Source: Selaginella moellendorffii
Taxonomy: Eukaryota > Plantae > Lycopodiophyta
NCBI RefSeq assembly: GCF_000143415.4
Contig: NW_003314275.1
Location: 625,955 to 689,954, forward strand
Direction: 5' to 3'
DNA length: 64,000 nt
The notes beneath the pieces were generated by a model. It searched no databases. It worked only from the letters and a program-made list of their open reading frames with translations, and had not been told where the DNA came from. Every line of letters begins with the position of its first letter. The stretch's first letter is position 1. Made by a program: the position numbers and the translations under genes. Positions 9,147 through 36,811 of the stretch are shown here, one piece after another.

Positions 9147-9328
9147 CTAGAAAATTTAGGGTTTAACGTATAGAATAAGGCTTTAGGCCGAATATTCTCA
9201 AGTCGTGTTCTTTCGTCACAGCGCAAGAGAATGGACCGGGTCTGGCATCGCGGAGCTAGGGTTCTACAATGCCCAGAGGAAGAAGTTTTCCATTCTTCCG
9301 TGCTACCGCTCGACGATCGATCAACGCC

Positions 9329-16672: not shown

Positions 16673-16720
16673 CCCACGTCGTCATGGAGTTCGACGTGGC
16701 GCGCGGTGGTGCCACGTGGC
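16673..16720. promoter_or_regulatory. Cluster of ACGT-core elements (ABRE/G-box) upstream of the ATL gene
   Basis: cccacgtc, cgacgtggc and palindromic gccacgtggc within about 50 bp. The G-box recurs at the starts of repeat blocks 2 and 3. Function not shown. Confidence 0.45.
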
Positions 16721-18800
16721 GGGTTTGGCGGGCAGTCGTGTCACTGCAATTCAAAAAAACAGGAGGGTGCTTTCAGTTCAGACATGAAGAGCATTCAATG
16801 CAAACGATGCCTTTCCCAAAAAATCATAAAATAAAGATTTAAAAGAAACGTTTTGTTTCATCGTTGGTGAGTACCTAAGTTGTCAAATCCTTGCTTAGAA
16901 TCTGGGAATTTATTTTGATGACATGAGCAAAAATTCGGAGCTCAATCTTCCCAAGACTTTTCCGAATGCCAGAGTGAGGTGATCATTGGATACCCAAAGC
17001 AAGTTTACTAGTACTACGGTAGAAATTAAGAACCGAGGTTTTTTCTGTTTATTCCCACAAGTTCCTCGTTTCTTGCCCTTTGTTTGCAACACTCCATACA
17101 AGGAGTGATTTTTGGAGGGAAGTTTGCAACTTCAAGCCACTTGATTGATTTAACCAGACAAGAACTATCTCTTTGCTTAGAATATGGTCATCTTTGCCTT
17201 AACGAATATTCCTAAAATATCCAGCTATATTTTAGGAACAAAATTTTATACTTTAATTCTTTTATAATCCTGTTTTATACTAATTTACTAGAATTATATA
17301 CCTCAATTTGATTTCATGCTTCTACACCATACCACGATTTATAGCCCCAAAAGTATATATGGTTTCCATAGAGATTTTAGAAAAACTAAAGGTGAAAAGG
17401 ATATATCACAAATATCCAAGTCTATACCTCAATCTAATTATTGATTTTCTTAGTTAGTTAGATAACCACCTAATAAACACCAAAAGCCATTCCGGTTATT
17501 ATGTGGTTATTCCATTTTTCCCTGAAAATGGCAGGTAGGCAGCAGATTTCTCCATTATACATGGTAGGTTTTAATTTGTATACCTAAGAAAGTTTTAAGA
17601 TAACTGAGCAAAATGCCTAATTAAGTAAATAAGGAGAGCCCTAGTTTTAGTGAGAATATTACTATCAAATCAAAGTAAAATACTTCTCTATAGTTATTTG
17701 TATTGAATAAATTCTCTCAAATATTCCCAGAAAACTCTATGCCTATGATAATATAAAATTTATTCTAATTATATAATATAAAATATACAACTTATTTATA
17801 ATGCTAAATTTATAGCTTGTATTAATTAAAATCTTGTTTTTTTTTTCATTTGTGCAACTTCTTTTGTTCATATTATTAAGGACAGAATGTAAATATTCTT
17901 GATAGTTCTTAGGGTAATCATTCAAAAGTGACATGATAGTTTTAAGAAGAATCATTTATATTAATTATGTAATTACTTTAGTATTTAAAGATAATTAGGT
18001 TACTTTATAATGTATTATCTATTCTCATTTTATTTCTTACTTATGGCTGGGAAAAATGTTCTATATATGTTGACTTTACTTTTTCTTTTTATATTAACTT
18101 TTATTTTTATAGCTAAAAGTGCACCACTAAAAACATGTGGTGAACATTGTGAAACAGATGATGAATGCAAGGATCAAATTGCATGTGTTGATAAAATTTG
18201 CCAAGATGATCCAGATATGAATACTAATCTTTGTCCAAATATAGGTAAGAAAATTTCACCACCTCCATTTGATACTTTATCTCCTCCTGATGAGGATTTA
18301 ACTCCTCCCAATTTTAAATAAATGTAATGCTAAGAACCTTACCAAATAAAATAAAATAAAATAAAAATTATGTTATTCAAGTTAGTGTATTGATTAATGC
18401 ATGTTGCTTTAGACGATTTATATCAGATAACTTTTAAAAAATTCAAGGAATTTAAAATTGATTATTTTGTGAAATTTTCTTTAAAAATGTGTTAAATTAT
18501 AATTTATTCCTAATAATAGTAATTTGTTAGCTAATTTAAGGTTTAGGTATATCTTGAATATATTCAAAAACACTTCAATCTAACAATTGTGATTTTTCCA
18601 CTATAAAACCTTCTCTAATTCATTGATAATCACTTAGTTAATAATATTACAATTATTTTTTAAATTTCCTCTCAATTCTCAATTTAGGACCAACCACCCT
18701 TCTGATCTTATAAATTTAGCAAACTCTAAAAGTTTATTACGTTAGTTTCATATATTAGTTCTTTGTTAGCTATAGTTTTATTAATTTTAATACAAGTTTT
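16705..18800 (+). repeat. Segmental repeat block, copy 1 (promoter region + kissper-like gene + 3' flank)
   Basis: Colinear with 23942-25975 and 31233-32805, with substitutions and small indels. Confidence 0.92.
18043..18321 (+). CDS. Secreted cysteine-rich peptide, kissper-like domain only (92 aa), copy 1
   Basis: Hydrophobic signal peptide, then C-x3-C-x5-C-x5-C-x4-C-x10-C with DDP (CGEHCETDDECKDQIACVDKICQDDPDMNTNLC), then Pro/Asp-rich tail and stop, followed by AATAAA repeats. Confidence 0.8.
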   Translation: MAGKNVLYMLTLLFLFILTFIFIAKSAPLKTCGEHCETDDECKDQIACVDKICQDDPDMNTNLCPNIGKKISPPPFDTLSPPDEDLTPPNFK

Positions 18801-19404
18801 TATAATAAGAAATTTTGTTATGGGAATAACAATATTAATTAGGGTTAGACCCCTTATCATATACATGACACAAATCCCTAAGCCCTAAAGTGGAGCAGAA
18901 AAAGCACCATATTTTAGTAGTCAAAGCAAAAGTCTAATAAATGTAATATGTTTAGACCAAAGGCTTTAACTTAAAAAGTTGAGAATAGAAGTGAAATCCC
19001 AAAAAAAGTGCTCAAAGAATGAGTTTCTAAAAAGGGACACAAGAAGGACTACCATATGGCAAATGTCATGATGCATAGAAGTGTCAAAAACAAGGAGTCT
19101 GAGAAGGAATCTAAGATACAGTGCAAAAAAGAGTTCAAGATGGAGTCCAAGAAGGAATTTAAGTGTGAGACATAAAATCCCTAGGCCCCAAAGTGGAGCC
19201 AGAAGGGTGCCATGTGGTAGTGGCCGAAGCGAAAGCCAAACGAGTGTAACATGTTTGGGCCAAAAGCTCCGACTTGAAAGGTCGAGAGCGGGAGTGGAAC
19301 TCCTAACGAAGTGCTCGAGGAATGAGCACAAAGCGAGCAATAAGCGAGGCTCCAAAAAGGGACCCAAAAGGATCAACATATGACACGTGGAAGTGTCCGA
19401 GAAG

Positions 19405-19862
19405 GACCCCGAGATGGAGTCCGAGGTGGAGTCCGAGATGGAGTCGGATGTGGACCTAAGATGGATCCAAAATTGAGTCCAAGACGGACCCGAGATGGAG
19501 TCCGAGATGGACCCGAGATGGACCCGAGATGGACCCGAGATGGACCCGAGATGGAGTCCGAGATGGACCCGAGATGGAGTCCGAGATGGACCCGAGATGG
19601 AGTCCAAGATGGACCCGAGATGGAGTACGAGATGGACCCGAGATGGACCCGAGATGGAGTCCGAGATGGACCCGAGATGGAGTCCGAGATGGAGTCCAAG
19701 ATGGACCCGAGATGGAGTCCGAAGTCAAGACCGAGACTGGGGCCGAGACCGGGACCGAGGCCGGGACCGAGGCCGAGACCGAGATCGGGACCGAGACCGA
19801 GGCCGAGACCGAGTCCGAGTCCGAGTCCGAGTCCGAGTCCGAGTCTGAGTCCGAGTCCGAGC
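19405..19862 (+). repeat. Tandem array inside the LTR: 11/12-mers gagatggaccc/gagatggagtcc, then 6-mers gagacc/gagtcc
   Basis: Directly visible; a decayed version lies at about 26440-26950. Confidence 0.95.
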
Positions 19863-20340
19863 CTGAGAGGGTGAAAGCCCAAAGCGTTCGTCTCCCAGAC
19901 CCTGGGGGGTTTGGTGAGCTCCAAAAGTATAGTAAGGGGAGGACTGCAATGGAGCCAGTTTGGCCAGAAAAGGCCAGTTTGGCCCAGGAAGGCCGGACCC
20001 AGTGTTGGGTGATGAGCTGCCCACTGGGAAGTCCAAGACTAGAGTGAACACGGACCAACAAGTGGGGTAGCTTGGTGAAGTGTTCAAGAGCCGGGTCTAG
20101 TTCCCTCGGGAGATCGACTGGCCGATGCTCCTAGTCCAAGTGTGGGTGGCACTACCTACTTGGATACCTGGCGTGGCTCAACGGAACCTCACTCTAAGCC
20201 CATGGCTAGAGCACCCAAAGGCAGAAGGCGAGGAGAGTACCTATGAGGCCCGCGCAGGGCCACGGTGTTCCGAAATGTTGTCCCCAAAGGCCCAGACTGT
20301 GGAAAGGAGGAGGAGTAGTCCTCTAGTGTAGTGACCAAGG

Positions 20341-20933
20341 TGTAAGCAACCAAAGAGAACGACTTGAGAGATGATCCATAGGGTTCAAACATAGAGGGAA
20401 AGGGCCTATGAACAAGAGTGCACCCCCTTTTCCAATCGGTTAAGGGTCTTGGGATAATTAGAGTTAAGCGTCTTTGGGTTTGAATAGTACTGGGCTGGGT
20501 GACCTCTCGAGAAGTCTAAACTCAGGAGCTTACATTTGGTATCAGAGCGGTCTCGGGTCCAACTCTGTTGGTTGGCTAAGGGAATCACACCACATGTTAA
20601 TTGACATCTGGCTGGTCCAGTTTGCTCCCGCTGGGCTCGACCCGAGGGGTAGGGTGTCAAGAGAGCGAGGCTCTCGGGAGAGCTGCGGCTCTCAGCTTCT
20701 GTTCACGAGGGCGTGAACTTGCAGGGAAGCGTGGTGGATTGTAAGCAACCAAAGGGAACGACTCGAGAGACGATCCATGGGGTTCAAATATAGAGGGAAA
20801 GGGCCCATGAATAAGAGTGCATCCCCTTTTCCAAACGGTTAAGGGTCTTGGGATATTTGGGGTTAAGCGTCCTTGGGTTTGAATAGTACTGGGTTGGGTG
20901 ACCTCCTGGGAAGTCCAAACTCAGGAGCTTACA
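20341..20933 (+). mobile_element. Cassandra-type TRIM (non-autonomous LTR element with 5S rRNA-derived LTR core)
   Basis: Two 194-bp LTRs (20341-20534, 20740-20933; TGTAAG...CTTACA), PBS TGGTATCAGAGC (tRNA-iMet) at 20537-20548, purine-rich tract at about 20723-20738, TSD CAAGG on both sides, 205-bp non-coding interior. Each LTR contains a 5S rRNA boxA-IE-boxC-like segment. Confidence 0.93.
20862..20916 (+). ncRNA. 5S rRNA-derived fragment (internal Pol III promoter region) in the 3' LTR; second copy at about 20462-20516
   Basis: GTTAAGCGTCCTTGGGTTTGAATAGTACTGGGTTGGGTGACCTCCTGGGAAGTCC aligns without gaps to plant 5S GTTAAGCGTGCTTGGGCGAGAGTAGTACTAGGATGGGTGACCTCCTGGGAAGTCC (recalled sequence). 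Confidence 0.88.
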
Positions 20934-21612
20934 CAAGGATACAGTCGAGTGGTGAGGAAGTCCCAGAGGGCCGTGGGACTTAGTGGTCGGGCCTGTGGGC
21001 CTCGATTCAGTGGCAGTGTTGGCGAACACGGCCATGGGCAGAAAGGGACTTGGTGAAGGCCGGAAAAGGGATATTGGGAAGGTTATTCCCCATGTCTGTG
21101 GGCATCCTAAGGATGCTAAGGAGTGGATCTGGAATGATCACTCATGGACGGATGATCTAGTCCTTGAGAGATGGGACTGTGATGCAGATGGTGTTAGCCC
21201 ACTAGTGTGACTAAGGTAAAGGGGCATGGCCTTAGCGTAATGGGCTGATATGTTGGTGGTGCCTTGGGGTGTCGGTCATGGGATCGGACACGTGGAGCAC
21301 TTGGATCAAGTGCATAGGTTGAGTGGCGGGGATGCCATTCTCAGGGCTAGCAAGCCCAAGTCCGAAATAGGACTTATGGAGGTTGTGAGTGAGACTTCTC
21401 CAAGTGGTCGGAGGTGTGGTTAAATGACTAAAGTAGAATGGAAAATTTAGTCGCTTACATTAAGATGGAGTTTGAGAAAGAGTTTGAGATGGAGTTTGAT
21501 ATAAACCCCAGATGGAGTCTGATATAGACTTAGAGTCCGAGACCAAGTTTGAGTTCGAGTTGAGTCTGAGTCCAAAGGGTGAAAGCCTAAAGTGATTGTC
21601 TCCCAAACCCTG

Positions 21613-22417
21613 GTGTGGCGAATTTGACTTCGAGTATCAAAAGTTACCTGTTGGCCAGTCCTTATGGACACTCTTTCCTTACTGCCATGACAGCAGGAGG
21701 TAAGTATTGCTAGACCCTTTATCAGTCCCTCTTGTGCTAGTGGAGTTAAGTGGGCATTTCGAGTGTACTTAAACCGGACGAGCATAAGGACAGAATTCCT
21801 ACGTGCTATTAGCTAAACACACTTAGCCCGATAAGGAGTTCCTGTCTCATTGTGTCTTGCACTGGCTAGTGATAATAACCCTCCTATATTGAGACTAGTC
21901 CCTTAATATTGCTGGATAATAGCTTACTATGTTTGCCAAACACCTTTGCTATTATGCCCTTTGTGTTAGTTTCATTTTGATCTTAAATTCTATTTATGAA
22001 AAGTGTCTAGATTTGCTCATTTGGCATATCTACAGAATGTAAAGATTGTTCTGAACACAATGGTGTTCATCCCGTGTCCAAATTCACAATCTAGGGATAT
22101 TTCATATTTAGTAAATTTCAAACTTATCCCAGAGACTAACTCCTAATACTAAAGGATGCTTGGGGTGAAAGCCCAAAGCATGTTTTGCTCAAGGGGGGGG
22201 GGGGGGGGGATGTGGGATAGTAGGGATAGTGGGTAGGTCAGGCATGCCTGACCAATCGAAGGCATAATCTAGTTCCCACTTGTGTGCTTGTCCTTGTTCT
22301 ACGTCTGACTTGGGCCTAAGCCCAAGTTCCATTCCATACTAGTTGGTGGAATACCCATGTCCTTGCATTAGGCCACAGATATGCCGAAATAGCGCCAGGC
22401 TCCGTTTGGCTCCGTTT
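21613..22417 (+). mobile_element. Probable fragment of a different LTR retroelement (poly-G PPT followed by TGT start)
   Basis: Long G run at about 22193-22209 followed by a-TGTGGG; sequence unrelated to the flanking LTR family. No second LTR seen. Confidence 0.35.
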
Positions 22418-23941
22418 GGTTATTAAAATTGGGGAAGTAATTCTCAAGTGTTCAAAAAGATGGCTTTGAACAAAAGTTAATGGTTGAGGACTTACATGCT
22501 TATGCATTAAACCATATTACACTGGTCGGGTGACTTGCTAAGCGAGATTAACAAGTCAGGGGAGCAAAGACTTTAGTTAAAGGTATTGACTCCAAAAGGG
22601 ATGGCCCATGGGGCTAAATATGCATGATCATAGACTTGTAAAATGAGAGGACTTGGCAGTTTGAAGAAACTAAGTTCCTAAACTATGATCTGTAGTGCGC
22701 ATTAAGTATAAATTGGTGCATTGGCGTAAGGAGTCATGCCAAACATTCTTAGTGATACTACTTGTAGATGCATATACGAAGGTTGGGTTTGAGTCGTAAC
22801 TCTCTAATGCTTGGGTTTGAGTCCCAACTCACTAAGGGCATGGTGATGGTTTGAAATATGAAGACACTCATTTTTCAGTGGTTATAAACTCTCAATAAGG
22901 AGATTGGTTTGAGCACACTACCAAGTGGGGGATGCCTTGAAGTCGTGATGCACAGTTAAATTGTTTAGTGTGAAAGCTTGGCATATCTAACTTGAATAAC
23001 TTTGGTGCAAGTGGCATCAAGGACATAAATGAAATAGAGACACCCAATCTCAGTTGAAATGGACCCTTAGCCAAAAAGGTTGGCTTGGGTGCATTGCCAA
23101 GTGTGGGGGATGCCCCTAGGGTCATGGTTAACAACTTAAAAGTTTGGAAAACATAATATTGATTAGCAAATCTATTAAAGTGTTAAGATGAGATCACTAA
23201 GTGATTTTATGGTTAAACAAGGATAAAACCCTTGTGACATTAAGGAATAAGGTTCTTAGTTCAAATTATTGATTTAAACTATTGGTAATAATATAACTTG
23301 GTCAAGGTGACCAAGTGGAAAGGACACGTAAGAGAAATGAGATATAGCAATACAATAGTGTTGTGAGTCCAAGAAAATAGTCTCTAAAGAAAGACCTATA
23401 CATGGGTCGCAAAATTGGCCCGTGGATAGAGCCCACAACAGATAATGCTAGAAAGAATTACTAAGGGTGAACACCTTTTGAACTTAGTGAAACAAAGCTT
23501 TTACTACAAAACCAAAAAAATATCACGAATATGGAAATAGTGATCCTAAATTGTTTAGTACAATAATCAAAGGATAGGAGTAAAAGACTAATCACCAAGA
23601 ATGGGTTATGGAAATTATTAAAAGGAATCTAAATAACAAAGTTATGTCAAGAACACTCATGTGTTGGATGCTAACAAATTATGGAAAATGAAATATGTTT
23701 TTGAAAATAAATTCCCAAATGCTCCAATTTGGCAAACGTGAAAGCTCCAAAAGATGGAGTGGCAAAATAGCCAAATGATAAAGCCATGAATAACATTAGC
23801 ATGAATTATGGATAAGTGGAATTTAGTGCCAAGGGTGGCACGAAATAAAAGTATTAGTGTGACCAACATGTGGTGGGTGATGATATAACCACTAAGGAGT
23901 CCAAGGCTAAACTTAATACGGATGGACAAATGGGGTAACTT
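22418..23941 (+). repeat. Decayed retroelement internal segment, duplicated at 29708-31232
   Basis: Near-identical 1.5-kb copies, each ending in an LTR-derived piece (…ggatggacaaatggggtaactt) joined to a kissper block. Confidence 0.88.
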
Positions 23942-25975
23942 GGTGGTGGAGCCACGTGGCAGGTTTGGCGGGCAGTTGTGTCACTGCAATTCAAAAAAAC
24001 AGGAGGGTGCTTTCAGTTCAGACATGAAGAGCATTCAATGCAAACGTTGCCTTTCCCAAAAAATTATAAAATAAAGTTTTGTTTGATCTTTGGTGAGTAC
24101 CTAAGTTGTCAAATCCTTGCTTAGAATCTGGGAATTTATTTTGATGACATGAGCAAAATTCAGAGCTCAATCTTCCCAAGACTTTTCCAAATGCTAGAGT
24201 GAGGTGATCATTGGATACACAAAGCAATTTTACTAGTACTATAGGTTACGGTAGAAATTAAGAACTGAGGTTTTTTCTGTTTATTCCCACAAGTTCCTCG
24301 TTTCTTGCCCTTTGTTCGCAACGCTCCAGACAAGGAGTGATTTTTGGAGGGAAGCTTGCAACTTCAAGCTAACCAGACAAGAACTATCTCATATGGTCAC
24401 TTTGCCTTAACAAATATTCCTAGAATATTCAGTTATATTTTAGGAACAAAATTTTATACTTTAATTCTTTTATAATCCTGGTCTACTTAGAATTATATAC
24501 CTCAATCTTATTTCATGCTTCTGCACCATACCCAAAAGTATATATGGTTTTTAGAAAAACTAAAGGTGAAAAGAATATATCATGAATATCCAAGTATATC
24601 CTATACCTCAATCTAATGATTGATTTTCTTATTAGTTATTTAGATAACCACCTAATAAACACCAAAAACCATTCCGGTGATTAAGTGGTTATTCCATTTT
24701 TCCCTGAAAATGGCAGGTAGGCAGTACATTTCTCCATTATACATATCAGGTTTTAATTTGTATACCTAAGAAAGTTCAAAATGCCTAATTAAGTAAATAA
24801 GGAGAGCCCTAGTTTTAGTAAGAATATTACTATCAAATCAAAGTAAAATACTTCTCTATAGTTCTTTGTATTGAATAATTTCTTTCAAATATTCCCAGAA
24901 AACTCTATGCCTATGATAATATAAAATTTATTCTAATTATATAATATAAAATATACAACTTGTTTATAATGCTAAATGTATAGCTTGTACTAATTAATAT
25001 CTTTTTTTTATTTGTGCAACTTCTTTTGTTCATATTATTAAGGACAGAATGTAAATATTCTTGATAGTTCTTAGGGTAATCATTCAAAAGTTACATGTTA
25101 GTTTTAAGAAGAATCATTTATATTAATTATGTAATTACTTTCGTATTTAAAGACAATTAGGTTACTTTATAGTATATTATCTATTCTCATTTTATTTCTT
25201 ACTTATGGCTAGAAAAAATGTTCTATATATTATGACTTTACTTTTTCTTTTTATATTAACTTTTATTTTTATAGCTAAAAGTGCACCACTTAAAACATGT
25301 GGTGAACATTGTGAAACAGATGATGAATGCAAGGATCAAATTGCATGTGTTGATAAAATTTGCCAAGATGATCCAGATATGAATACTAATCTTTGTCCAA
25401 ATATAGGTAAGAAAATTTCACCACCTCCATTTGATACTTTATCTCCTCCTGATGAGGATTTAACTCCTCCCAATTTTAAATAAATGTAATGCTAAAAACC
25501 TTACTAAATAAAATAAAATAAAGTAAAAATTATGTTATTCAAGTTAGTGTATTGATTGGTGCAATTTTGTTATGCATGTTGCTTTAGATTATTTATATCA
25601 GATATCTTTTAAAAAATTCAAGGAATTTAAAATTGATTATTTTGTGAAATTTTCTTTTAAAATGTACTAAATTATAATTCAATCCTAATAATAATAATTT
25701 TTTAGCTAATTTAAAATTTTGGTATATCTTGAATATTTTAAAAAACACTTCAATCTCAAAATTGTGAATTTTCCACTATTAAACCTTCTCTAATTCATTG
25801 ATAATCACTTAGTTAATAATATTACAAATTTTTTCAAATTTCCTCTCAATTCTCAATTTAGGACCAACCACCCTTCTGACCTTATGAATTTACCAAACTC
25901 TAAAAGTTTATTACATTAGTTTCATATATTAGTTTTTTTATAGCTATAGTTTTATTAATTTTAATACAAGTTTTA
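23942..25975 (+). repeat. Segmental repeat block, copy 2
   Basis: Colinear with 16705-18800. Confidence 0.92.
25205..25483 (+). CDS. Secreted cysteine-rich peptide, kissper-like domain only (92 aa), copy 2
   Basis: Intact ORF; mature region identical in protein to copy 1. Confidence 0.8.
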   Translation: MARKNVLYIMTLLFLFILTFIFIAKSAPLKTCGEHCETDDECKDQIACVDKICQDDPDMNTNLCPNIGKKISPPPFDTLSPPDEDLTPPNFK

Positions 25976-26195
25976 GTAACTCAGGATAAGCAAAGCCCTG
26001 GAAGCTAGCCTCAAACGATACCATGCCTACGAGAGTGCCAAGAGCAGTGAAGACTAGACTATAGCAATCCTGGAGAATGCATTTCTGACCTAGTTTTTGG
26101 GGCAGAAAGCACCATTGAAATAAGCTGTAATCATAGGAGTGTCCTCTTCTCATATACAAGAATGGATGAACTAAATTTAGTTTAAATGAATAATC

Positions 26196-29100
26196 TGTGA
26201 GACAAAAATCCTTAAGCCCCAAAGTGGAGAAAAAAAGTACCACATGGTAGTGGTCGAAATGAAAGTCTAATAAACATAACATATTTGGACTAAAGGCTCT
26301 GATTTGAAAAATCAAGAGTAAGAATGCAACTCTAGAAAAAGTGCTTGAGGAATGAGCATGAAATAATTGGTGAATGAGTATCTAAAAAAGGACATAAGGA
26401 GGATTGACATATGGCAAGTGTCATAATGCATGGAAGAGTCTGAAAAGGAGTTTGAGAAAGAATCTGAGATAAAGTCCAAAATGGAGTACAAAATGGAGTC
26501 TGAGAAAGAATTTAAGATGGAGTTCAAGGAGTTTGAGATAGAGTCCAATATAGACCCAAGATAGAGTCTGATATGAACCTGAGATGGAGTTTAATATGGA
26601 CCCGAGATGGACCCGAGATGGAGTGTAATATGGACCCAAGATGGAGTTTAAGATGGAGTTCAAGATGGATCTTATGAGATGGACCCGAGATGGAGTGTAA
26701 TATGGACCCAAGATGGAGTTTAAAATGGAGTTCAAGATGGATCTTATGAGATGGACCCGAGATGGAATTTGAGATGCACCGGAGATGGAGTTTGAGGTCA
26801 AGTCCAAGATGGACCTTAAATGGAGTCTAAGGTTGAGGCCGAGAAAGAGACTGAGACTGAGATTGAGATTGAGACCAAGACTAAGATCGAGACCGAGTTC
26901 GAGACCAAGTTCAAGAATAAGTCTAAGTTTGAGTTTGAGTCTAAGTCTGAACTCAAGGGTGAAAGCCCAAAGCGATTGTCTCCTAGACCCTGAGGGGTTT
27001 GGTGAGCTAAAAGTATAATAAGGGGACAACTCTAATAGAGCCAATTTAGCTAGGAAAGGCTAATATGACCAAGAAATGTTATACCCACTCGGTGGGTGAT
27101 AATATAACCATTAAGGAGTCAAATAAAGATGGACAAATGGGGTAATTTAATAAAGTGTTTAAGAGTTAGCTTTAGCTCTTCCAAAAGATCAAATGGTCAA
27201 TGCTCCAATCCAAGTGTGAGTGGCACTACTTACTTAGATACTTGGTGTGGCTCATCAAAACCTTATTCTAGCCACATGGATAGGGCACCTAAAGGCACAA
27301 GATGGAGAGAGTACTCACAAGGCTTGTGTAAGAGCATAGTGTTTTAAAATGTTATCCTAAAGTTCTAGATTGTGGAAAGGAAGAGGAACAATCTTCTTGT
27401 GTAGTAACCAAGGATGCAATCATATGGCAAGTAAATCCCAAAGGTTAATAGGATGTAGTGGTTGGCCCTCGGGCCCTGACACAATAGTAATGTTAGTGAA
27501 CACGGCCGAGGACGAAGAAGAACTTGGTGTGGACTGAAAAAGGAATGTTGGGGAAAGTTGTTCCTCATGTTTTTAGCCATCCTAAGAATGTTAAGAAGTG
27601 GTTCTGGGATGACCATTCATGGATGGATGGCTTAATATTTGAGAGATAGGACTATGGCATAAGTGGCCTAGAACTACCAATGAGACAAAGATAAATGGAC
27701 ATGGCTTTAATATAACATACTGATATATTAAAAGTACCTTTGGTGTTTTGATCATGGGATCAAATACGTAGAGTACTTAAATCAAGTGCAAAGACTGAGT
27801 CTCGAAGTTTGGCATATGACTTATGGAGGTTGTGAGTGAGACTCCTCCAAATGGTCGAAAGTGTAGTTAAAAATTTAAAGCAAAGTGAAAATTTTAGTTA
27901 TTTACAATTTGATATCAAAGTTATTCTTTAGTCTGACTCTTATTAGTGGTTGAGTATATCACCACTCATATTGGCATCGGAAGGCCTTAAGAGTGGGCCT
28001 ATTCTCAAAGAGTAGCATGTCTAAATGGCATGACTCTCTACTTTAGTGCATATGCAAACATGTAAGATGTGATGGANNNNNNNNNNNNNNNNNNNNNNNN
28101 NNNNNNNNNNNNNNNNNNNNNNNNNNNNNNNNNNNNNNNNNNNNNNNNNNNNNNNNNNNNNNNNNNNNNNNNNNNNTCAAATGTTAGAGTAACACTTGCA
28201 AAGATGATCTTTATGAGTAAGACATAAATACAAGAAGTTGTATTCTAGCGAGTTGGCATATCAAAAGTAGTCATGAGGTTCAGACTTTACGGGTTATCAA
28301 ATTAACAAAGTTTAAAAGATAAATGACTCAAGTGAAGTTAAGGAATAGTCTTAAAGGATTGGTGGAAACATTTGGATTAAGGTGTATTGTACCCTATGAA
28401 GGATAGGGAGGATCATGAGATCCAAGTATGGGTATCTCATTAATGCTAGAATGTGCTATATTAAAGTCATGGGAAAGGTGTTTTCGGAAAAAAATAACTT
28501 TGGCACAGAGTTATATATGAACACTATAAAGCAATGCTAACTAGTAGTTGGTATAAAAAATGACTAGTTTGATTTTGATAAGACCTAGACACAAGTGGAA
28601 AGTGTTATTAAAATAGGATTAAAAAGCCAATAGGGTGAAGACCCCAAATGTCCCAAAGGATAATTTCATGAGAACCCCTTGTTAAAGGAACCCTAATGAA
28701 AACAATACCTTAGATATGGTAGAATTCAAGTCTTGGTAAAAGTGTAGAAGTATCAGCAATGAGTTGTAAAATATAATACTTATAAAGCAATTAAACAAAG
28801 GTTGAAAATGATTTGCTGGAATAGTGGGAGTTAACTTCTAGAGACTTCTTGGTTAGATAAAAAAAGAGGTTAAATACATTCTTTAAGGGATAGTATGCTT
28901 ATGTTGCGATATAGTGAGTTTGTATCAATAAGAAACATTCATTGTTGGGAAATTCTATCACGAAAACATATAATCATTTTAAAAACACCAAAGAAGTGAC
29001 GTTTGGGTATTAAAGGGGCATTAGATAAGACCCAAAAGATGAAGTCTCTAAAGAAGAATGGATATAAACTACTATCTAATATCCAAGGTTGACAAAGACA

Positions 29101-31232
29101 AGATAAGTTTAACTATCCAAAGTGGATCAAACTAAAAGGATTTTTGCATGGCTAGCAATGAGTATAAAGAAGCTTATGTATAGCAACATTAATCTTGATG
29201 TGTGGGATTATATAGTAAACATATCCAAATTAAAGAACCACTCCCTAAATCATTAAGTAAATTCATCCTTAAAAATACTTGCTAATGCATGGTTGAAAGG
29301 GCAAAGCTACCCTTCTAGTTAGGAAGAGAATAATTAAAGGGAACATATAAAGCCAAAATCAAGTAGTAAAGGGATAGAATTGAACCATAAAAATCAAAGA
29401 GTATAACCAAGGGTAATTATATAAGTTGGGAGTGGAAAATCAAGTGGTGCTCGAAAGTGTTGCTATTGGCAACTATAATGCCATAAAGACTCTAAAGTAT
29501 AAAATTGTTAATGTTAGACTATATGGCAATTAAAAGACATGTAAAAAGAAAGGTATTAGCAAAATAAAGAACAGAGTCCTTTTGAGGTTCTCAAAGACAA
29601 TTTTAGGTATGTTAATACTTAGAATGATAAATATAAATGTTTTATAAAAATGAGTGAAATCAAATTGGTATAGCGAAAACATGGTATTGAAGCTTGCCAT
29701 GAGATGAGGTTATCAAAATTGGGGAAGTAATTCTCAAGTGTTCAAAAAGATGGCTTTGAACAAAAGTTAATGGTTGAGGACTTACATGCTTATGCATTAA
29801 ACCATATTACGCTGGTCGGGTGACTTGCTAAGCGAGATTAACAAGTCAGGGGAGCAAAGACTTTAGTTAAAGGTATTGACTCCAAAAGGGATGGCCTATG
29901 GGGCTAAATATGCATGATCATAGACTTGTTAAATGAGAGGACTTGGCAGTTTGAAGAAACTAAATTCCTAAACTATGATCTGTAGTGCGCATTAAGTATA
30001 AATTGGTGCACTGGCGTAAAGAGTCACGCCAAAACATTCTTAGTGATACTATTTATAGATGTATATACGAAGGTTGGGTTTGAGTCGTAACTCTCTAATG
30101 CTTGGGTTTGAGTCCCAACTCACTAAGGGCATGGTGATGGTTTGAAATATGAAGACACTCATTTTTCAGTGGTTATAAACTCTCAATAAGGAGATTGGTT
30201 TGAGCACACTACCAAGTGGGGGATGCCTTGAAGTCGTGATGCACAGTTAAATTGTTTAGTGTGAAAGCTTGGCATATCTAACTTGAATAACTTTGGTGCA
30301 AGTGGCATCAAGGACATAGATGAAATAGAGACACCCAATCTCAATTGAAATGGACCCTTAGCCAAAAAGGTTGGCTTGGGTGCATTGCCAAGTGTGGGGG
30401 ATGCCCTTAAGGTCATGGTTAACAACTTAAAAGTTTAGAAAACGTAATATTGATTAGCAAATCTATTAAAGTGTTAAGATGAGATCACTAAGTGATTTTA
30501 TGGTTAAACAAGGATAAAACCCTTGTGACATTAAGGAATAAGGTTCCTAGTTCAAATTATTGATTTAAACTATTGGTAATAATATAACTTGGTCAAGATG
30601 ACCAAGTGGAAAGGACACATAAGAGAAATGAGTTATAGCAATACAATAGTGTTGTGAGTCCAAGAAAATAGTCTCTAAAGAAAGACTTATACATGGGTCG
30701 CAAAATTGGCCCGTGGATAGAGCCCACAACAGATAATGCTGGAAAGAATTACTAAGGGTGAACACCTTTTGGACTTAGTGAAACAAAGCTTTTACTACGA
30801 AACCAAAAAGATATCACGAATATGGAAGTAGTGATCCTAAATTGTTTAGTACAATAATCAAAGGATAGGAGTAAAAGACTAATCACCAAGAATGGGTTAT
30901 GGAAATTATTAAAAGGAATCTAAATAACAAAGTTATGTCAAGAACACTCATGTGTTGGATGCTAACAAATTATGGAAAATGAAATATGTTTTTGAAAATA
31001 AATTCTCAAATGCTCGAATTTGGCAAACGTGAAAGCTCCAAAAGATGGAGTGGCAAAATAGCCAAATGATAAAGCCATGAATAACATTAGCATGAATTAT
31101 GGATAAGTGGAATTTAGTGCCAAGGGTGGCACGAAATAAAAGTATTAGTGTGACCAACACGTGGTGGGTGATGATATAACCACTAAGGAGTCCAAGGCTA
31201 AAGTCAATATGGATGGACAAATGGGGTAACTT
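26196..31232 (+). mobile_element. Decayed LTR retrotransposon: 5' LTR 26196-27906, degenerate PBS, internal region without intact ORFs
   Basis: TGTGAG...TTTACA LTR (1711 bp) homologous to the solo LTR, followed by ttgatatcaaag (decayed TGGTATCAGAGC). Purine-rich internal sequence with many stops; superfamily not assignable by eye. Confidence 0.8.
28077..28176. other. Assembly gap (100 N)
   Basis: Run of n. Confidence 1.
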
Positions 31233-32805
31233 GGTGGTGGAGCCACGTGGTGGGTTTGGTGGGCAGTCGTGTCACTGCAATTCAAAAAAACAGGAGGGTG
31301 CTTTCAGTTTAGACATGAAGAGCATTCAATGCAAACGCTGCCTTTCCCAAAAAATTATAAAATAAAGATTTAAAAGCAACGTTCTGTTTGATCGTTGGTG
31401 AGTACCTAAGTTGTCAAATCCTTGCTTAGAATCTGGGAATTTATTTTGATGACATGAGCAAAATTCAGAGCTCAATCTTCCCAAGACTTTTCCAAATGCC
31501 AGAGTGAGGTGATCATTGGATACACAAAGCAATTTTACTAGTACTATAGGTTACGGTAGAAATTAAGAACCGAGGTTTTTTCTGTTTATTCCCACAAGTT
31601 CCTCATTTCTTGCCCTTTGTTCGCAACGCTCCAAACAAGGAGTGATTTTTGGAGGGAAGTTTGCAACTTCAAGCTAACCAGACAAGAACTATCTCATATG
31701 GTCACTTTGTCTTAACGAATATTCCTAGTTATATTTTAGGAACAAAATTTTATACTTTAATTCTTTTATAATCCTGGTCTACTTAGAATTATATACCTCA
31801 ATCTTATTTCATGCTTCTACACCATACCCAAAAGTATATATGGTTTTTAGAAAAACTAAAGGTGAAAAGAATATATCACGAATATCCAAGTATATCCTAT
31901 ACCTCAATCTAATGATTGATTTTCTTATTAGTTATTTAGATAACCACCTAATAAACACCAAAAACCATTCCGGTGATTAAGTGGTTATTCCATTTTTCCC
32001 TGAAAATGGCAGGTAGGCAGTACATTTCTCCATTATACATGTCAGGTTTTAATTTGTATACCTAAGAAAGTTCAAAATGCAAATATTCCCAGAAAACTCT
32101 ATGCCTATGATAATATAAAATTTATTCTAATTATATAATATAAAATATACAACTTGTTTATAATGCTAAATGTATAGCTTGTACTAATTAATATCTTTTT
32201 TTTATTTGTGCAACTTCTTTTGTTCATATTATTAAGGACAGAATGTAAATATTCTTGATAGTTCTTAGGGTAATCATTCAAAAGTTACATGATAGTTTTA
32301 AGAAGAATCATTTATATTAATTATGTAATTACTTTTGTATTTAAAGACAATTAGGTTACTTTATAGTATATTATCTATTCTCATTTTATTTCTTACTTAT
32401 GGCTAGAAAAAATGTTCTATATATTATGATTTTACTTTTTCTTTTTATATTAACTTTTATTTTTATAGCTAAAAGTGCACCACTTAAAACATGTGGTGAA
32501 CATTGTGAAACAGATGATGAATGCAAGGATCAAATTGCATGTGTTGATAAAATTTGCCAAGATGATCCAGATATGAATACTAATCTTTGTCCAAATATAG
32601 GTAAGAAAATTTCACCACCTCCATTTGATACTTTATCTCCTCCTGATGAGGATTTAACTCCTCCCAATTTTAAATAAATGTAATGCTAAAAACCTTACCA
32701 AATAAAATAAAATAAAGTAAAAATTATGTTATTCAAGTTAGTGTATTGATTGGTGCAATTTTGTTATGCATGTTGCTTTAGATGATTTATATCAAATAAC
32801 TTTTA
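31233..32805 (+). repeat. Segmental repeat block, copy 3 (internal deletion near 32080, 3' truncated)
   Basis: Shares copy-2-specific indels; joined at about 32810 to an LTR fragment. Confidence 0.9.
32399..32677 (+). CDS. Secreted cysteine-rich peptide, kissper-like domain only (92 aa), copy 3
   Basis: Intact ORF; differs from copy 2 by one residue (T to I) in the signal peptide. Confidence 0.8.
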   Translation: MARKNVLYIMILLFLFILTFIFIAKSAPLKTCGEHCETDDECKDQIACVDKICQDDPDMNTNLCPNIGKKISPPPFDTLSPPDEDLTPPNFK

Positions 32806-32809
32806 AGAA

Positions 32810-33344
32810 AGCCATGGTGTTTTGAAATGTTGTCCCAAAGTCTTAGACTATAGAAAAGGAGAGTAGTAACCAAGGATGCAATTATATAGCAAGGAAGTCC
32901 CAAAGGTTAATGGGATGTAATGGTTGGGCCTTTAGGCCCTAACCCAATGGTAGTGTTGGCAAACATAACTAGGGACAAAAAGAGATTTGGTGGGGACTGA
33001 AAAAGAGATGTTGGGGAAAGTTGTTCCCCATGTCTTTGGGCATTCTAAGGATACTAAAGAGTAATTTTAAAATGACCACTCATAAACGAATGATTTAGTC
33101 TTTGAAAGATGGGACTATGGCACAGATGATCTAAAATTACCAATAAGACAGGGTAAATGGACATAGTTTTAGTATAACATGTTGATATATTGGTAGTACC
33201 TTTAGGGTGTCAATCATAAGATTGAATACGTGAAGCATTTGGACCAAATGCAAAGTTAAGTGGCATAGATGCCATCCATGGGGCTAATAAGTCCTTAAGT
33301 CTAGAATAAGACTTATAAAGGTTGTAAATGAAACTCTCCCAAGT
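32810..33344 (+). mobile_element. 3'-half LTR fragment of the same family
   Basis: Colinear with 20260-20340 + 20939-21410 and with 27330-27850; lacks the Cassandra insertion (aaccaaggatgcaa). Confidence 0.8.
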
Positions 33345-36039: not shown

Positions 36040-36811
36040 CTTGTCAAGAACCATAGCATTCCTCTTAGCCACACTTGATTGATTATAGAGTTTTAGATCA
36101 CTCTTGATTTGCTCATAGATTGTTAAACAAGTGTGATTCCTTGTAGGGACGGTGGGATCTTGCTGGACTTTTAGCACTACTGCTTTCTCAAGACTGGAAA
36201 GCTTGTTAGCTGGAGCAAGGAGCAACTGATTGATTGTGATTACAGGGTGCCTCTCACACTTGAGTTGAATACGCATTGAGCATATCCATATTTCCAGGAT
36301 GGCTGCTGTGAAGGTGGCGCAATACTACCCGCCTACGAGTGCGTCAAAACCAGGGGTCTGGAATCTGAGGAAGTCTACCCTTGTGAAGAACTAGGCTACG
36401 TTTCAGACCTTGTGAACCCGTTCGTGGTCGGTGTGATTTCCGCCCAAGCAAGGTGGCCGCCACCATTGCAAACTACTCAACAGTGTCCGAGGACGAGGAC
36501 CAAATCGCTGCCAATCTGGTGAAGAACGTCGAGTGAGTATCTTTTGTTCTCTGGAAAAAATCTGACATTGGGTGGTTTTTGCAGTCGCACTTAAAGGACA
36601 GTTTCTATTCACTTACAAGGTGCGCATTTGCCCTGGGGAGATGGACCATGCAGTGCTGCTTGTTGGCTATGGCACCGAGGATGGTGTGCCCTATTGGACC
36701 CTGAAGAATTCTTGGGCCGATAAGTTTGGTGAAGATGGGTATTTCCGGCTGTGTCGAGGTTTTGGTGCTTGTGACATGAAAGTTACTACTATCTCTGCCT
36801 ATTCTATGTGA
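36040..36811 (+). pseudogene. Papain-family (RD19-like) cysteine protease, 3' (mature) half
   Basis: GSCWTFSTT, (frameshift/deletion) FLKTGKLVS..EQLIDCD, C.GG, GLESEE.YP, DEDQIAANLVK, DHAVLLVGYG, PYW.LKNSW..FGEDGYFRLCRG...C. Confidence 0.85.

What the first reader, a model, noticed from the sequence alone, without database searches (positions are those of the whole stretch)
18043..32677. Three-copy array of stand-alone kissper-like secreted peptide genes lacking the kiwellin barrel domain
Seen: three intact intronless 92-aa ORFs (18043, 25205, 32399), each with a signal peptide, CGEHCETDDECKDQIACVDKICQDDPDMNTNLC and a Pro/Asp-rich tail. Established: kiwifruit kissper (CNGPCRDLNDCDGQLICIKGKCNDDPQVGTHIC, recalled) has the same C-x3-C-x5-C-x5-C-x4-C-x10-C spacing, Q and DDP. 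Kissper is normally the N-terminal module of kiwellin, released by proteolysis, and is followed by a Pro-rich linker and a barwin-like double-psi beta-barrel. Here a stop follows the linker and no barrel exon is visible. Inference: a genomically encoded, acidic, kissper-only peptide family (defence or signalling), amplified in a transposon island and easily missed by gene finders.
Basis: partly seen in the sequence, partly recalled or inferred. Interest (0 to 1): 0.85.

Follow-up and report, generated by a model that had tools for sequence, protein, structure and literature searches.

The report
Barrel-less kissper peptide genes, three copies
Three near-identical small genes in a land-plant genome encode a secreted, disulfide-knotted peptide truly related to kissper, the N-terminal piece of the kiwifruit defence protein kiwellin, with no kiwellin body attached and no RNA found in any sampled run.

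Summary
Three intact 92-aa ORFs (18043, 25205, 32399, + strand) lie in a ~7.2 kb tandem duplication and are identical from residue 12 on.

The kissper reading holds statistically:
- phmmer against 1.84 billion proteins gives 18 hits (best E 1.8e-10). Sixteen carry the kissper motif; two (P0007, P0010) are other Cys-rich repeat proteins.
- A profile that includes the ORF hits kiwifruit kiwellin residues 2-37 at E 5e-17.
- An HMM of 15 full-length Kissper-Kiwellins hits the ORFs at E ~3e-15, only over signal peptide plus kissper.
- No kiwellin barrel is encoded anywhere in the 64 kb.

The relatives checked are intronless, so the GT after the last Cys is probably just Gly-Lys codons.

For a working gene: the mature region shows 1 synonymous change in 201 nt against 5.1% flank divergence, and GC1/GC2/GC3 is 43/35/10%. 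Against: no reads in three RNA-seq runs, and no indexed RNA run holds the sequence.

Barrel-less kissper proteins already sit unnamed in public protein sets (Selaginella, cotton, hibiscus). The open literature treats kissper as a kiwellin-only domain. The same scan noted three other kissper-only loci elsewhere in this genome; I did not test them.

Verdict: a real, divergent, barrel-less kissper gene cluster; function and expression unproven.

The parts
18043..18321 (+). Copy 1 of the 92-aa kissper-only ORF; an extra in-frame ATG at 18010 would add 11 residues
   Evidence: Kissper-Kiwellin HMM E 6e-15
25205..25483 (+). Copy 2 of the ORF, used as reference for the sub-parts below
   Evidence: phmmer hits to kissper proteins, best E 1.8e-10; HMM E 4e-15
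32399..32677 (+). Copy 3 of the ORF; last unit of the array, similarity ends at 32810
   Evidence: HMM E 3e-15. A public run's contig shows this copy's form, with the 102-bp skip and the T at 25236
25205..25282 (+). Signal peptide, residues 1-26: MARKN, a 19-residue hydrophobic core, then A-K-S before the likely cleavage site. This is the only part of the protein that varies between copies
   Evidence: read from the sequence; aligns to the signal peptides of Kissper-Kiwellins (HMM positions 3-66). No signal-peptide predictor was available
25298..25396 (+). Kissper core, residues 32-64: six Cys, DDP and T conserved; Asp and Asn replace two near-invariant Gly
   Evidence: ungapped alignment A2; per-position table; AF2 pLDDT 80-86 with a beta-hairpin
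25397..25480 (+). Pro/Asp-rich tail, residues 65-92, with SPPP, SPP and TPP motifs; predicted disordered. It corresponds to the Pro-rich linker or tail of relatives
   Evidence: 0 differences between copies
25406..25408 (+). Donor-like AG|GTAAGA, phase 1, in codon 68 (also 18244|18245 and 32600|32601). No evidence that it is used
   Evidence: read from the sequence; no reads; relatives intronless. Celery's kissper-kinase gene does splice 4 codons after its last Cys
24886..25204 (+). Upstream block conserved in all three copies (also 17718-18042 and 32080-32398), with TATA-like TATTTAAA at 25144-25151, 54-61 nt before the ATG
   Evidence: 2-11 substitutions per 319 nt between copies. Promoter function is inferred
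25484..25616 (+). Downstream block shared by all three copies, with three overlapping AATAAA signals about 25-45 nt after the stop (25507-25528)
   Evidence: Polyadenylation is inferred, not observed
16705..32810 (.). Tandem array: unit 1 at 16705-23944, unit 2 at 23945-31235, partial unit 3 at 31236-32810. AT-rich (20-31% GC around the ORFs)
   Evidence: self-BLAST; composition
28077..28176 (.). Assembly gap inside unit 2's intergenic part. It interrupts no ORF, but spacing and copy number across it are unverified

Best explanation
Each copy is a compact, intronless gene for a secreted mini-protein. It has a cleavable signal peptide, one kissper domain and a disordered Pro/Asp-rich tail. The kissper domain is a 33-residue, three-disulfide unit of knottin type, homologous to the N-terminal module of Kissper-Kiwellins. 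There is no kiwellin double-psi beta-barrel. The predicted mature product is about 7.3 kDa with pI about 4.2. The gene was amplified to at least three copies by tandem duplication of a ~7.2 kb unit. Shown: homology, absence of the barrel, tandem structure, low divergence of the mature-peptide region, and a coding-type base periodicity. Inferred: the peptide is exported to the apoplast. There it would act as a stable disulfide-knotted defence peptide, either membrane-active like kiwifruit kissper or a binder/inhibitor like related knottins. Expression would be restricted to a tissue, stage or stress not yet sampled.
For: Homology: phmmer of the ORF against 1.84e9 representatives gives 18 hits at E<=1e-3, best 1.8e-10. 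Sixteen carry the same Cys spacing with the DDP..T motif, and several are Kissper-Kiwellins whose barrel matches Pfam KWL1 PF24300. The alignment to 20 kissper domains has no gap within the ORF's domain, and the 6 Cys, DD and T are invariant. The profile hits kiwellin 4pmk/4x9u residues 2-37 at E 5e-17. An HMM of 15 full-length Kissper-Kiwellins hits the three ORFs at E 3e-15 to 6e-15 over HMM positions 3-66 only; every other piece of the six-frame window scores E>0.2. Fold: AF2 with the alignment gives pLDDT 80-86 over the core with a beta-hairpin. The best Foldseek matches are knottins, and 4x9u aligns over 38 columns at rmsd 1.2 A. Selection: copy 1 against copy 2 shows 92/1801 (5.1%) substitutions in the flanks, 4/78 in the signal peptide, and 1/201 (synonymous) in mature peptide plus tail. 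GC1/GC2/GC3 is 43/35/10%, chi-square p 1e-6. Gene form: the Selaginella barrel-less gene, a Xanthoceras Kissper-Kiwellin and a Gossypium barrel-less gene are all single-exon. Barrel-less relatives that also end in a Pro-rich tail exist in Selaginella and Gossypium.
Against: There is no transcript evidence. Zero reads lie on the ORF in three RNA-seq runs, with 1.38 Gb read from each. Nineteen further RNA contig sets of the species hold 0.00 of the sampled words. A search with the transcript region alone finds only a genomic-looking contig set. The ORFs have no CpG and GC3 of 10%, against 47-79% for every neighbouring gene; that would also fit a silenced, methylated region. The invariance of the mature region could come from local gene conversion rather than selection. 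Two near-invariant Gly and the invariant Leu of the family are replaced, and the domain sits on a long branch. The structural match is not independent, because the model was built from an alignment of kissper domains. Function is extrapolated from in-vitro work on kiwifruit kissper as cited in PMC9813671.
Confidence: 0.6

Rival explanations
1. Silent relics: the three ORFs are unexpressed duplicates of a decaying kissper gene in a methylated, AT-rich, transposon-bearing stretch, and are intact only because the duplications are recent.
For: No RNA in any sampled or indexed run. No CpG, and a GC3 of 10% unlike all neighbouring genes. Transposon insertions lie within the units. Consensus Gly and Leu positions are replaced.
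Against: At 5.1% flank divergence, about 10 substitutions are expected in the 201-nt mature region; 1 synonymous change is seen. All three frames are intact. The strong GC1>GC2>GC3 periodicity (p 1e-6) means the frame was kept while silent sites drifted to AT, which takes far longer than the age of the array. All family-defining residues are retained despite a long branch.
Confidence: 0.2
2. First exon of a larger spliced gene: the AG|GTAAGA four codons after the last Cys is a real phase-1 donor, and the Pro-rich tail is intron read-through. The precedent is celery, where a double-kissper exon is spliced to transmembrane and kinase exons.
For: The donor-like site is a perfect consensus. In celery, exon 1 of the kissper-kinase gene ends in phase 1 four codons after the last Cys. 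The 115-aa ORF calls from short contigs are that exon read through into the intron.
Against: No barrel, transmembrane-kinase or other recognisable coding piece lies downstream of any copy. The only kinase in the window is upstream at 9269-11800. Copy 3 shares only 133 bp beyond its stop with the other copies. The 77-nt tail has 0 differences where about 4 are expected for intron-like drift. The Selaginella, Xanthoceras and Gossypium relatives checked are intronless. No spliced or loose-ended reads were seen, though there were no reads at all.
Confidence: 0.08
3. Convergent look-alike: an unrelated cysteine-rich peptide (defensin-like, late-nodulin-like or another knottin) that happens to share the kissper Cys spacing.
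For: Pfam gives only sub-threshold hits: AtDEF-like 21 bits (cutoff 25), EB, Nodulin_late. phmmer of the single ORF against PDB sequences misses kiwellin. The direct BLASTP to kissper is only 25 bits.
Against: The hits are library-wide significant and mostly of one family (16 of 18 carry the motif). There is a strong transitive link to the solved kissper. The alignment has no gap within the ORF's domain and conserves non-Cys residues D, D, P, T and Q. The signal peptide and the Pro-rich segment are in the same order as in relatives.
Confidence: 0.03

Closest known systems
Kissper, the N-terminal 39-residue module of kiwifruit kiwellin (Act d 5; PDB 4pmk, 4x9u) and of Kissper-Kwl1 kiwellins
   Same: Identical Cys spacing. 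Conserved DDP, T and Q. A signal peptide directly upstream and a Pro-rich segment directly downstream. Acidic. Predicted small disulfide-rich fold with a beta-hairpin. Intronless gene in the one Kissper-Kiwellin checked.
   Different: No kiwellin core: the frame stops after a 28-residue tail and no barrel is encoded in 64 kb. The free peptide would therefore need no proteolytic release. The core is only about 33-39% identical. Two near-invariant Gly are replaced by Asp and Asn, and the invariant Leu by Ile.
Selaginella moellendorffii hypothetical proteins EFJ07084.1 / EFJ05927.1 (132-138 aa), and the C-terminal part of EFJ32885.1
   Same: Secreted, barrel-less, intronless, ending in a Pro-rich tail. 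They share the ACV/ACM signature after the third Cys. They are the closest sequences found: 55% over 33 residues, and sister in the domain tree at 99/95 support.
   Different: They carry two kissper domains in tandem; the window ORF has one. Their gene is GC-rich (GC3 68%) against GC3 10% here. They are annotated, though unnamed.
Malvaceae barrel-less kissper proteins (Gossypium KAB2050541.1 and relatives, Hibiscus trionum; 91-104 aa)
   Same: The same architecture of signal peptide, one kissper domain and a Pro-rich tail, in an intronless gene.
   Different: Their kissper is of the angiosperm type and forms its own clade, so barrel loss was probably independent. UniRef names them only 'Carboxypeptidase A inhibitor-like domain-containing'.
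Apiaceae kissper-kinase proteins (celery XP_074325755.1, carrot XP_017235062.1, annotated as G-type lectin S-receptor-like kinase B120)
   Same: The kissper module is used without a kiwellin barrel.
   Different: Two kissper domains form the ectodomain of a transmembrane kinase. The module is a separate first exon. Nothing of that kind lies downstream here.
Potato metallocarboxypeptidase inhibitor and other plant knottins (PDB 4cpa, 1h20; squash trypsin inhibitors)
   Same: The kissper profile matches the first half of the potato inhibitor at E about 1e-3. The best structural matches of the model are knottins.
   Different: The second half has a different loop pattern. The C-terminal residues that the potato inhibitor inserts into the enzyme are not conserved. 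Pfam CarbpepA_inh does not reach its threshold on any relative.

Membership tests
Kissper domain (N-terminal module of Kissper-Kiwellins) | Six Cys spaced C-x3-C-x5-C-x5-C-x4-C-x10-C | tested here: met
   Residues 32-64 in all three copies. The alignment with 20 family domains has no gap within the ORF's domain.
Kissper domain (N-terminal module of Kissper-Kiwellins) | Conserved non-Cys residues: DDP after Cys5, T before Cys6, Q in the third loop | tested here: met
   DDP is 86/86, T 83/86 and Q 79/86 in the family, and all are present here. The near-invariant Gly13, Leu15 and Gly29 are replaced by Asp, Ile and Asn.
Kissper domain (N-terminal module of Kissper-Kiwellins) | Statistically significant sequence similarity to accepted members | tested here: met
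   phmmer best E 1.8e-10 over 1.84e9 proteins, with Kissper-Kiwellins among the hits. Profile to 4pmk residues 2-37 at E 5e-17. Kissper-Kiwellin HMM at E 3e-15.
Kissper domain (N-terminal module of Kissper-Kiwellins) | Small three-disulfide fold as in 4pmk/4x9u residues 1-39 | tested here: inconclusive
   AF2 core pLDDT is 80-86, and 4x9u aligns over 38 columns at rmsd 1.2 A. The Foldseek E-value is 0.56, and the model depends on an alignment of kissper domains. Disulfide pairing was not read out.
Kissper domain (N-terminal module of Kissper-Kiwellins) | pH-dependent, voltage-gated pore formation in lipid bilayers (reported for kiwifruit kissper; cited in PMC9813671) | not testable with these tools
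   Needs synthetic or recombinant peptide and planar-bilayer recording.
Kiwellin (Pfam KWL1 PF24300, double-psi beta-barrel core) | Kiwellin core domain following the N-terminal region | tested here: not met
   No PF24300 hit on the ORFs. An HMM of full-length Kissper-Kiwellins matches only positions 3-66. There is no barrel-region hit better than E 0.2 in the six-frame translation of the whole window. tblastn with 15 kiwellins gives only noise.
Plant defensin-like / late-nodulin cysteine-rich peptides (PF25052, PF07127) | Score above the curated Pfam threshold | tested here: not met
   AtDEF-like scores 21.2-21.5 bits against a cutoff of 25; Nodulin_late 10.6-11.6 against 30.4.
Potato-type metallocarboxypeptidase inhibitor knottins (PF02977) | Full-length match including the C-terminal inhibitory tail | tested here: not met
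   No PF02977 hit on the ORFs. The kissper profile matches only residues 6-24 of the inhibitors, at E about 1e-3.

The most novel reading that the evidence does not exclude
Kissper is an autonomous, mobile extracellular module, not a kiwellin appendage. In this plant the free peptides might work with S-domain receptor kinases, in the manner of a cysteine-rich ligand encoded beside its receptor. The hints are three. A G-type lectin S-receptor kinase gene lies 6 kb upstream of the array (9269-11800). In celery and carrot a double-kissper exon has replaced the ectodomain of exactly this kinase class. In celery that gene sits next to a G-type lectin kinase gene.
Probability: 0.08. Interest if true: 0.75.

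Novelty: new variant of a known kind. Interest (0 to 1): 0.5.

Why it matters
The biological role of kissper is unknown. The one family-wide study found in the held paper library (PMC9813671) states that the domain is restricted to the Kwl1 kiwellins.

This locus and the relatives it led to show otherwise. The module also occurs:
- on its own, with a Pro-rich tail, in a probable lycophyte, in Selaginella and in Malvaceae;
- as the ectodomain of a receptor kinase in Apiaceae.

That makes kissper a free-standing domain whose function can be studied apart from the kiwellin barrel. It also suggests the free peptide seen in kiwifruit may reflect an older, independent activity.

The extreme AT-richness of the gene (GC3 10% beside neighbours at 47-79%) may also help explain why annotation missed it.

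Tried and rejected
- **Single-sequence searches that missed the family.** phmmer against PDB sequences found only omwaprin at E 1.7. The word-indexed 5.8-billion-protein search found nothing. The protein-atlas feature search gave only sub-0.9 leads to assorted toxins. Single-sequence AF2 gave a meaningless all-helix model, pLDDT 62.
- **Exact-product look-up:** not on record.
- **Bacterial promoter/terminator scan:** irrelevant for a plant gene.
- **Downstream barrel exon:** rejected. I read stop-to-stop ORFs by eye, then ran tblastn and an HMM over six frames.
- **Downstream kinase or transmembrane exons, as in Apiaceae:** none found.
- **The cotton gene as first exon of the kinase 2.2 kb downstream:** that kinase is only weakly similar to the celery one, so this is not supported.
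- **Naming the organism:** run and organism names are coded. A neighbouring PPR gene's best hits are Selaginella moellendorffii at only 27-41% identity. The species' own proteome is therefore absent from the collection, and 'lycophyte' is only probable.
- **Earlier scan notes by sequence:** blank.
- **Domain tree:** 33 columns resolve few forks and the window ORF has a long branch, so I use it only as a hint.
Full report
**1. Observation**

The window holds three 92-aa ORFs on the + strand, at 18043-18321, 25205-25483 and 32399-32677.
- They are identical from residue 12 onward.
- The only differences are four signal-peptide positions (residues 3, 9, 10 and 11) and one synonymous site.
- tblastn finds no further copy.
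- They lie in a tandem duplication of about 7.2 kb. Units start near 16705, 23945 and 31236, and the third unit ends at 32810, 133 bp after its stop.

**2. The assembly gap**

The gap at 28077-28176 touches no ORF.
- Sequence on its left (27409-27906) and right (29708 onward) is colinear with unit 1 in the same order and orientation.
- The gap itself sits in a stretch where the two units do not align.
- Continuity, spacing and true copy number therefore stay unverified.
- A contig from a public run reproduces copy 3's form. It looks genomic and may come from the same sample as the assembly.

**3. Is it kissper?**

Weak methods missed the link:
- phmmer against PDB sequences;
- Pfam, which gave only sub-threshold defensin-like, EB and late-nodulin hits;
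- the word-indexed search;
- direct BLASTP, which gave only 25 bits.

An exhaustive phmmer of the ORF against 1.84 billion representatives gave 18 hits at E<=1e-3, the best at 1.8e-10.
- Sixteen of them carry C-x3-C-x5-C-x5-C-x4-C-x10-C with DDP and T. The other two (P0007, P0010) are other Cys-rich repeat proteins.
- Several are Kissper-Kiwellins whose C-terminal part matches Pfam KWL1 at E 1e-49 to 8e-55.

The ORF aligns to 20 such domains with no gap within its own domain. That profile hits kiwifruit kiwellin residues 2-37 at E 5e-17. An HMM of 15 full-length Kissper-Kiwellins scores the three ORFs at E 3e-15 to 6e-15, over signal peptide plus kissper only. Homology to kissper is therefore established, not merely a shared Cys pattern.

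This is a divergent member.
- It is 39% identical (median) to kiwellin-type domains and 55% to the nearest one, from Selaginella.
- Asp and Asn replace two Gly that are near-invariant in the family (85/86 and 81/86).
- Ile replaces an invariant Leu.
- From general structural knowledge, Asp and Asn are the usual substitutes for Gly at positive-phi turn positions, so these changes need not break the fold.

**4. No barrel**

The same HMM finds nothing of the barrel in any frame of the 64 kb; all other pieces score E>0.2. tblastn with 15 kiwellins gives only noise. No kinase or transmembrane exon follows any copy.

**5. The donor-like site**

AG|GTAAGA lies in codon 68, in phase 1. Such a site can be real: in celery a double-kissper first exon ends in phase 1 four codons after its last Cys and is spliced to kinase exons.

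Four points argue against use of the site here.
- The Selaginella barrel-less gene, a Xanthoceras Kissper-Kiwellin and a Gossypium barrel-less gene are all single-exon.
- The 77-nt tail shows no difference between copies, where about 4 would be expected from flank divergence.
- Copy 3 shares only 133 bp beyond its stop with the others.
- Pro-rich tails or linkers follow kissper in relatives.

I read the GT as Gly-Lys codons, with a residual probability of about 8% that it is used.

**6. Is it a working gene?**

For:
- Copy 1 against copy 2 shows 5.1% substitutions in 1801 flanking positions and 4/78 in the signal peptide. Mature peptide plus tail shows 1/201, and that change is synonymous.
- About 10 substitutions were expected there, so the Poisson probability is about 4e-4.
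- GC at codon positions 1/2/3 is 43/35/10% (p 1e-6). This means the frame was maintained while silent sites ran to AT.
- A TATA-like TATTTAAA sits 54-61 nt before the ATG, and three AATAAA follow the stop.

Against:
- Three RNA-seq runs of the species, with 1.38 Gb read from each, put no read on the ORF.
- Nineteen RNA contig sets hold none of its sampled words.
- A search with the transcript region alone returns only the genomic-looking set.
- The ORFs have no CpG, and their GC3 of 10% contrasts with 47-79% in all nine neighbouring coding regions measured. That would also fit a methylated, silent region.
- Gene conversion could mimic the conservation.

I put a functional gene with narrow expression at about 0.6 and silent relics at about 0.2.

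**7. Fold and likely mechanism**

- With the family alignment, AF2 gives pLDDT 80-86 over the core, a beta-hairpin, and a disordered tail.
- The best Foldseek matches are knottins: squash trypsin inhibitor and spider toxins. Kiwellin 4x9u aligns over 38 columns at rmsd 1.2 A. All E-values are 0.2-0.6, and the model is not independent of the family.
- The kissper profile also touches the first half of potato carboxypeptidase inhibitor at E about 1e-3.
- The predicted mature peptide has pI 4.2, and 14 of its 66 residues are acidic.

The reported activity of kiwifruit kissper is pore formation in artificial bilayers, and its role in the plant is unknown (PMC9813671). The most likely reading is a secreted, protease-stable, disulfide-knotted defence peptide. 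Whether it acts on membranes or binds a protein target is open.

**8. Comparison with what is known**

PMC9813671 counts 143 kissper-bearing proteins among 915 kiwellins and calls the domain restricted to Kwl1. None of the 19 papers in the held library that mention kissper appears, by title and abstract, to describe a barrel-less gene.

Public protein sets nevertheless already hold such proteins, unnamed:
- Selaginella moellendorffii: two kissper domains, 132-138 aa.
- Gossypium and Hibiscus: one domain plus a Pro-rich tail.
- Possibly Trifolium.
- Apiaceae: kissper as a kinase ectodomain.

A 33-column tree puts the window ORF sister to a Selaginella domain (99/95) and the Malvaceae proteins in their own clade. 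That hints at separate losses or origins, but the tree is weak and the ORF has a long branch.

**9. Organism**

Names are coded by the tools. The peptide's nearest relatives, and those of a neighbouring PPR gene, are in Selaginella moellendorffii, but at low identity. This is a non-seed land plant, probably a lycophyte, whose proteome is not in the collections searched.

**10. Earlier notes of this scan**

Three other notes report kissper-only loci on other pieces of the same genome. I could not read those sequences. Another note on this window reports the invariant, CpG-free mature region; I tested that here and it holds.

**11. Verdict**

This is a real, statistically supported, barrel-less kissper gene in three tandem copies. 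It is a new variant of a known kind. Expression and function are unproven.

Noticed in passing
window 20341-20933; empty site at 27409-27413: A 593-bp element with TG...CA ends is inserted in unit 1 only. It is flanked by a 5-bp duplication, CAAGG, and unit 2 keeps the empty site. The insertion is therefore younger than the unit 1/2 duplication.
   Followed up: partly
window 9269-11800 (+): An intronless 843-aa G-type lectin S-receptor-like kinase (B_lectin, PAN, kinase) lies 6 kb upstream of the first kissper copy. In celery, a kissper-ectodomain kinase of the same kinase class sits next to a G-type lectin kinase gene (L006).
   Followed up: partly
window, all coding regions measured: Composition is sharply bimodal. 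The kissper ORFs have GC3 10-12% and no CpG. The nine neighbouring coding regions measured (NIF phosphatase, kinase, RING, papain exon, NPH3, two PPR, GH3, F-box) have GC3 47-79% and 6-217 CpG each.
   Followed up: partly
window 36566-36808 (+): An exon of a papain-family cysteine protease (Peptidase_C1, E 1e-18) lies about 4 kb downstream of copy 3. In kiwifruit, kissper is released from kiwellin by a papain-family protease. The Selaginella barrel-less kissper gene has a subtilase gene just upstream (L001 2974-5734). Either may be coincidence.
   Followed up: no
L006 2001-4423 (celery); P0002, P0019, P0021: Celery and carrot proteins annotated as 'G-type lectin S-receptor-like kinase B120' have no lectin domain. 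Their ectodomain is two kissper domains encoded by a separate first exon. The 115-aa 'stand-alone' ORFs from short contigs (P0001, P0020, P0022) are that exon read into the intron.
   Followed up: partly
P0003 / P0024 (Selaginella EFJ32885.1, EFJ05711.1): These 236-aa gene models join an EAF7-like N-terminal part to two kissper domains. RefSeq isoforms of the same loci (P0025, P0026) stop before the kissper part. The fusion is probably an annotation artefact hiding another barrel-less kissper gene.
   Followed up: no
window 19395-19870 and 26538-27044: A low-complexity stretch with repeats offset by about 12 bp and by 70-160 bp gives long spurious ORFs on both strands. It is present in units 1 and 2 at about 72% identity.
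   Followed up: no
window 18010-18042: Copy 1 alone has an in-frame ATG 33 nt upstream, giving a 103-aa ORF. It is created by substitutions relative to copies 2 and 3. It lies only about 20 nt downstream of the TATA-like box, so it may fall outside the transcript.
   Followed up: no
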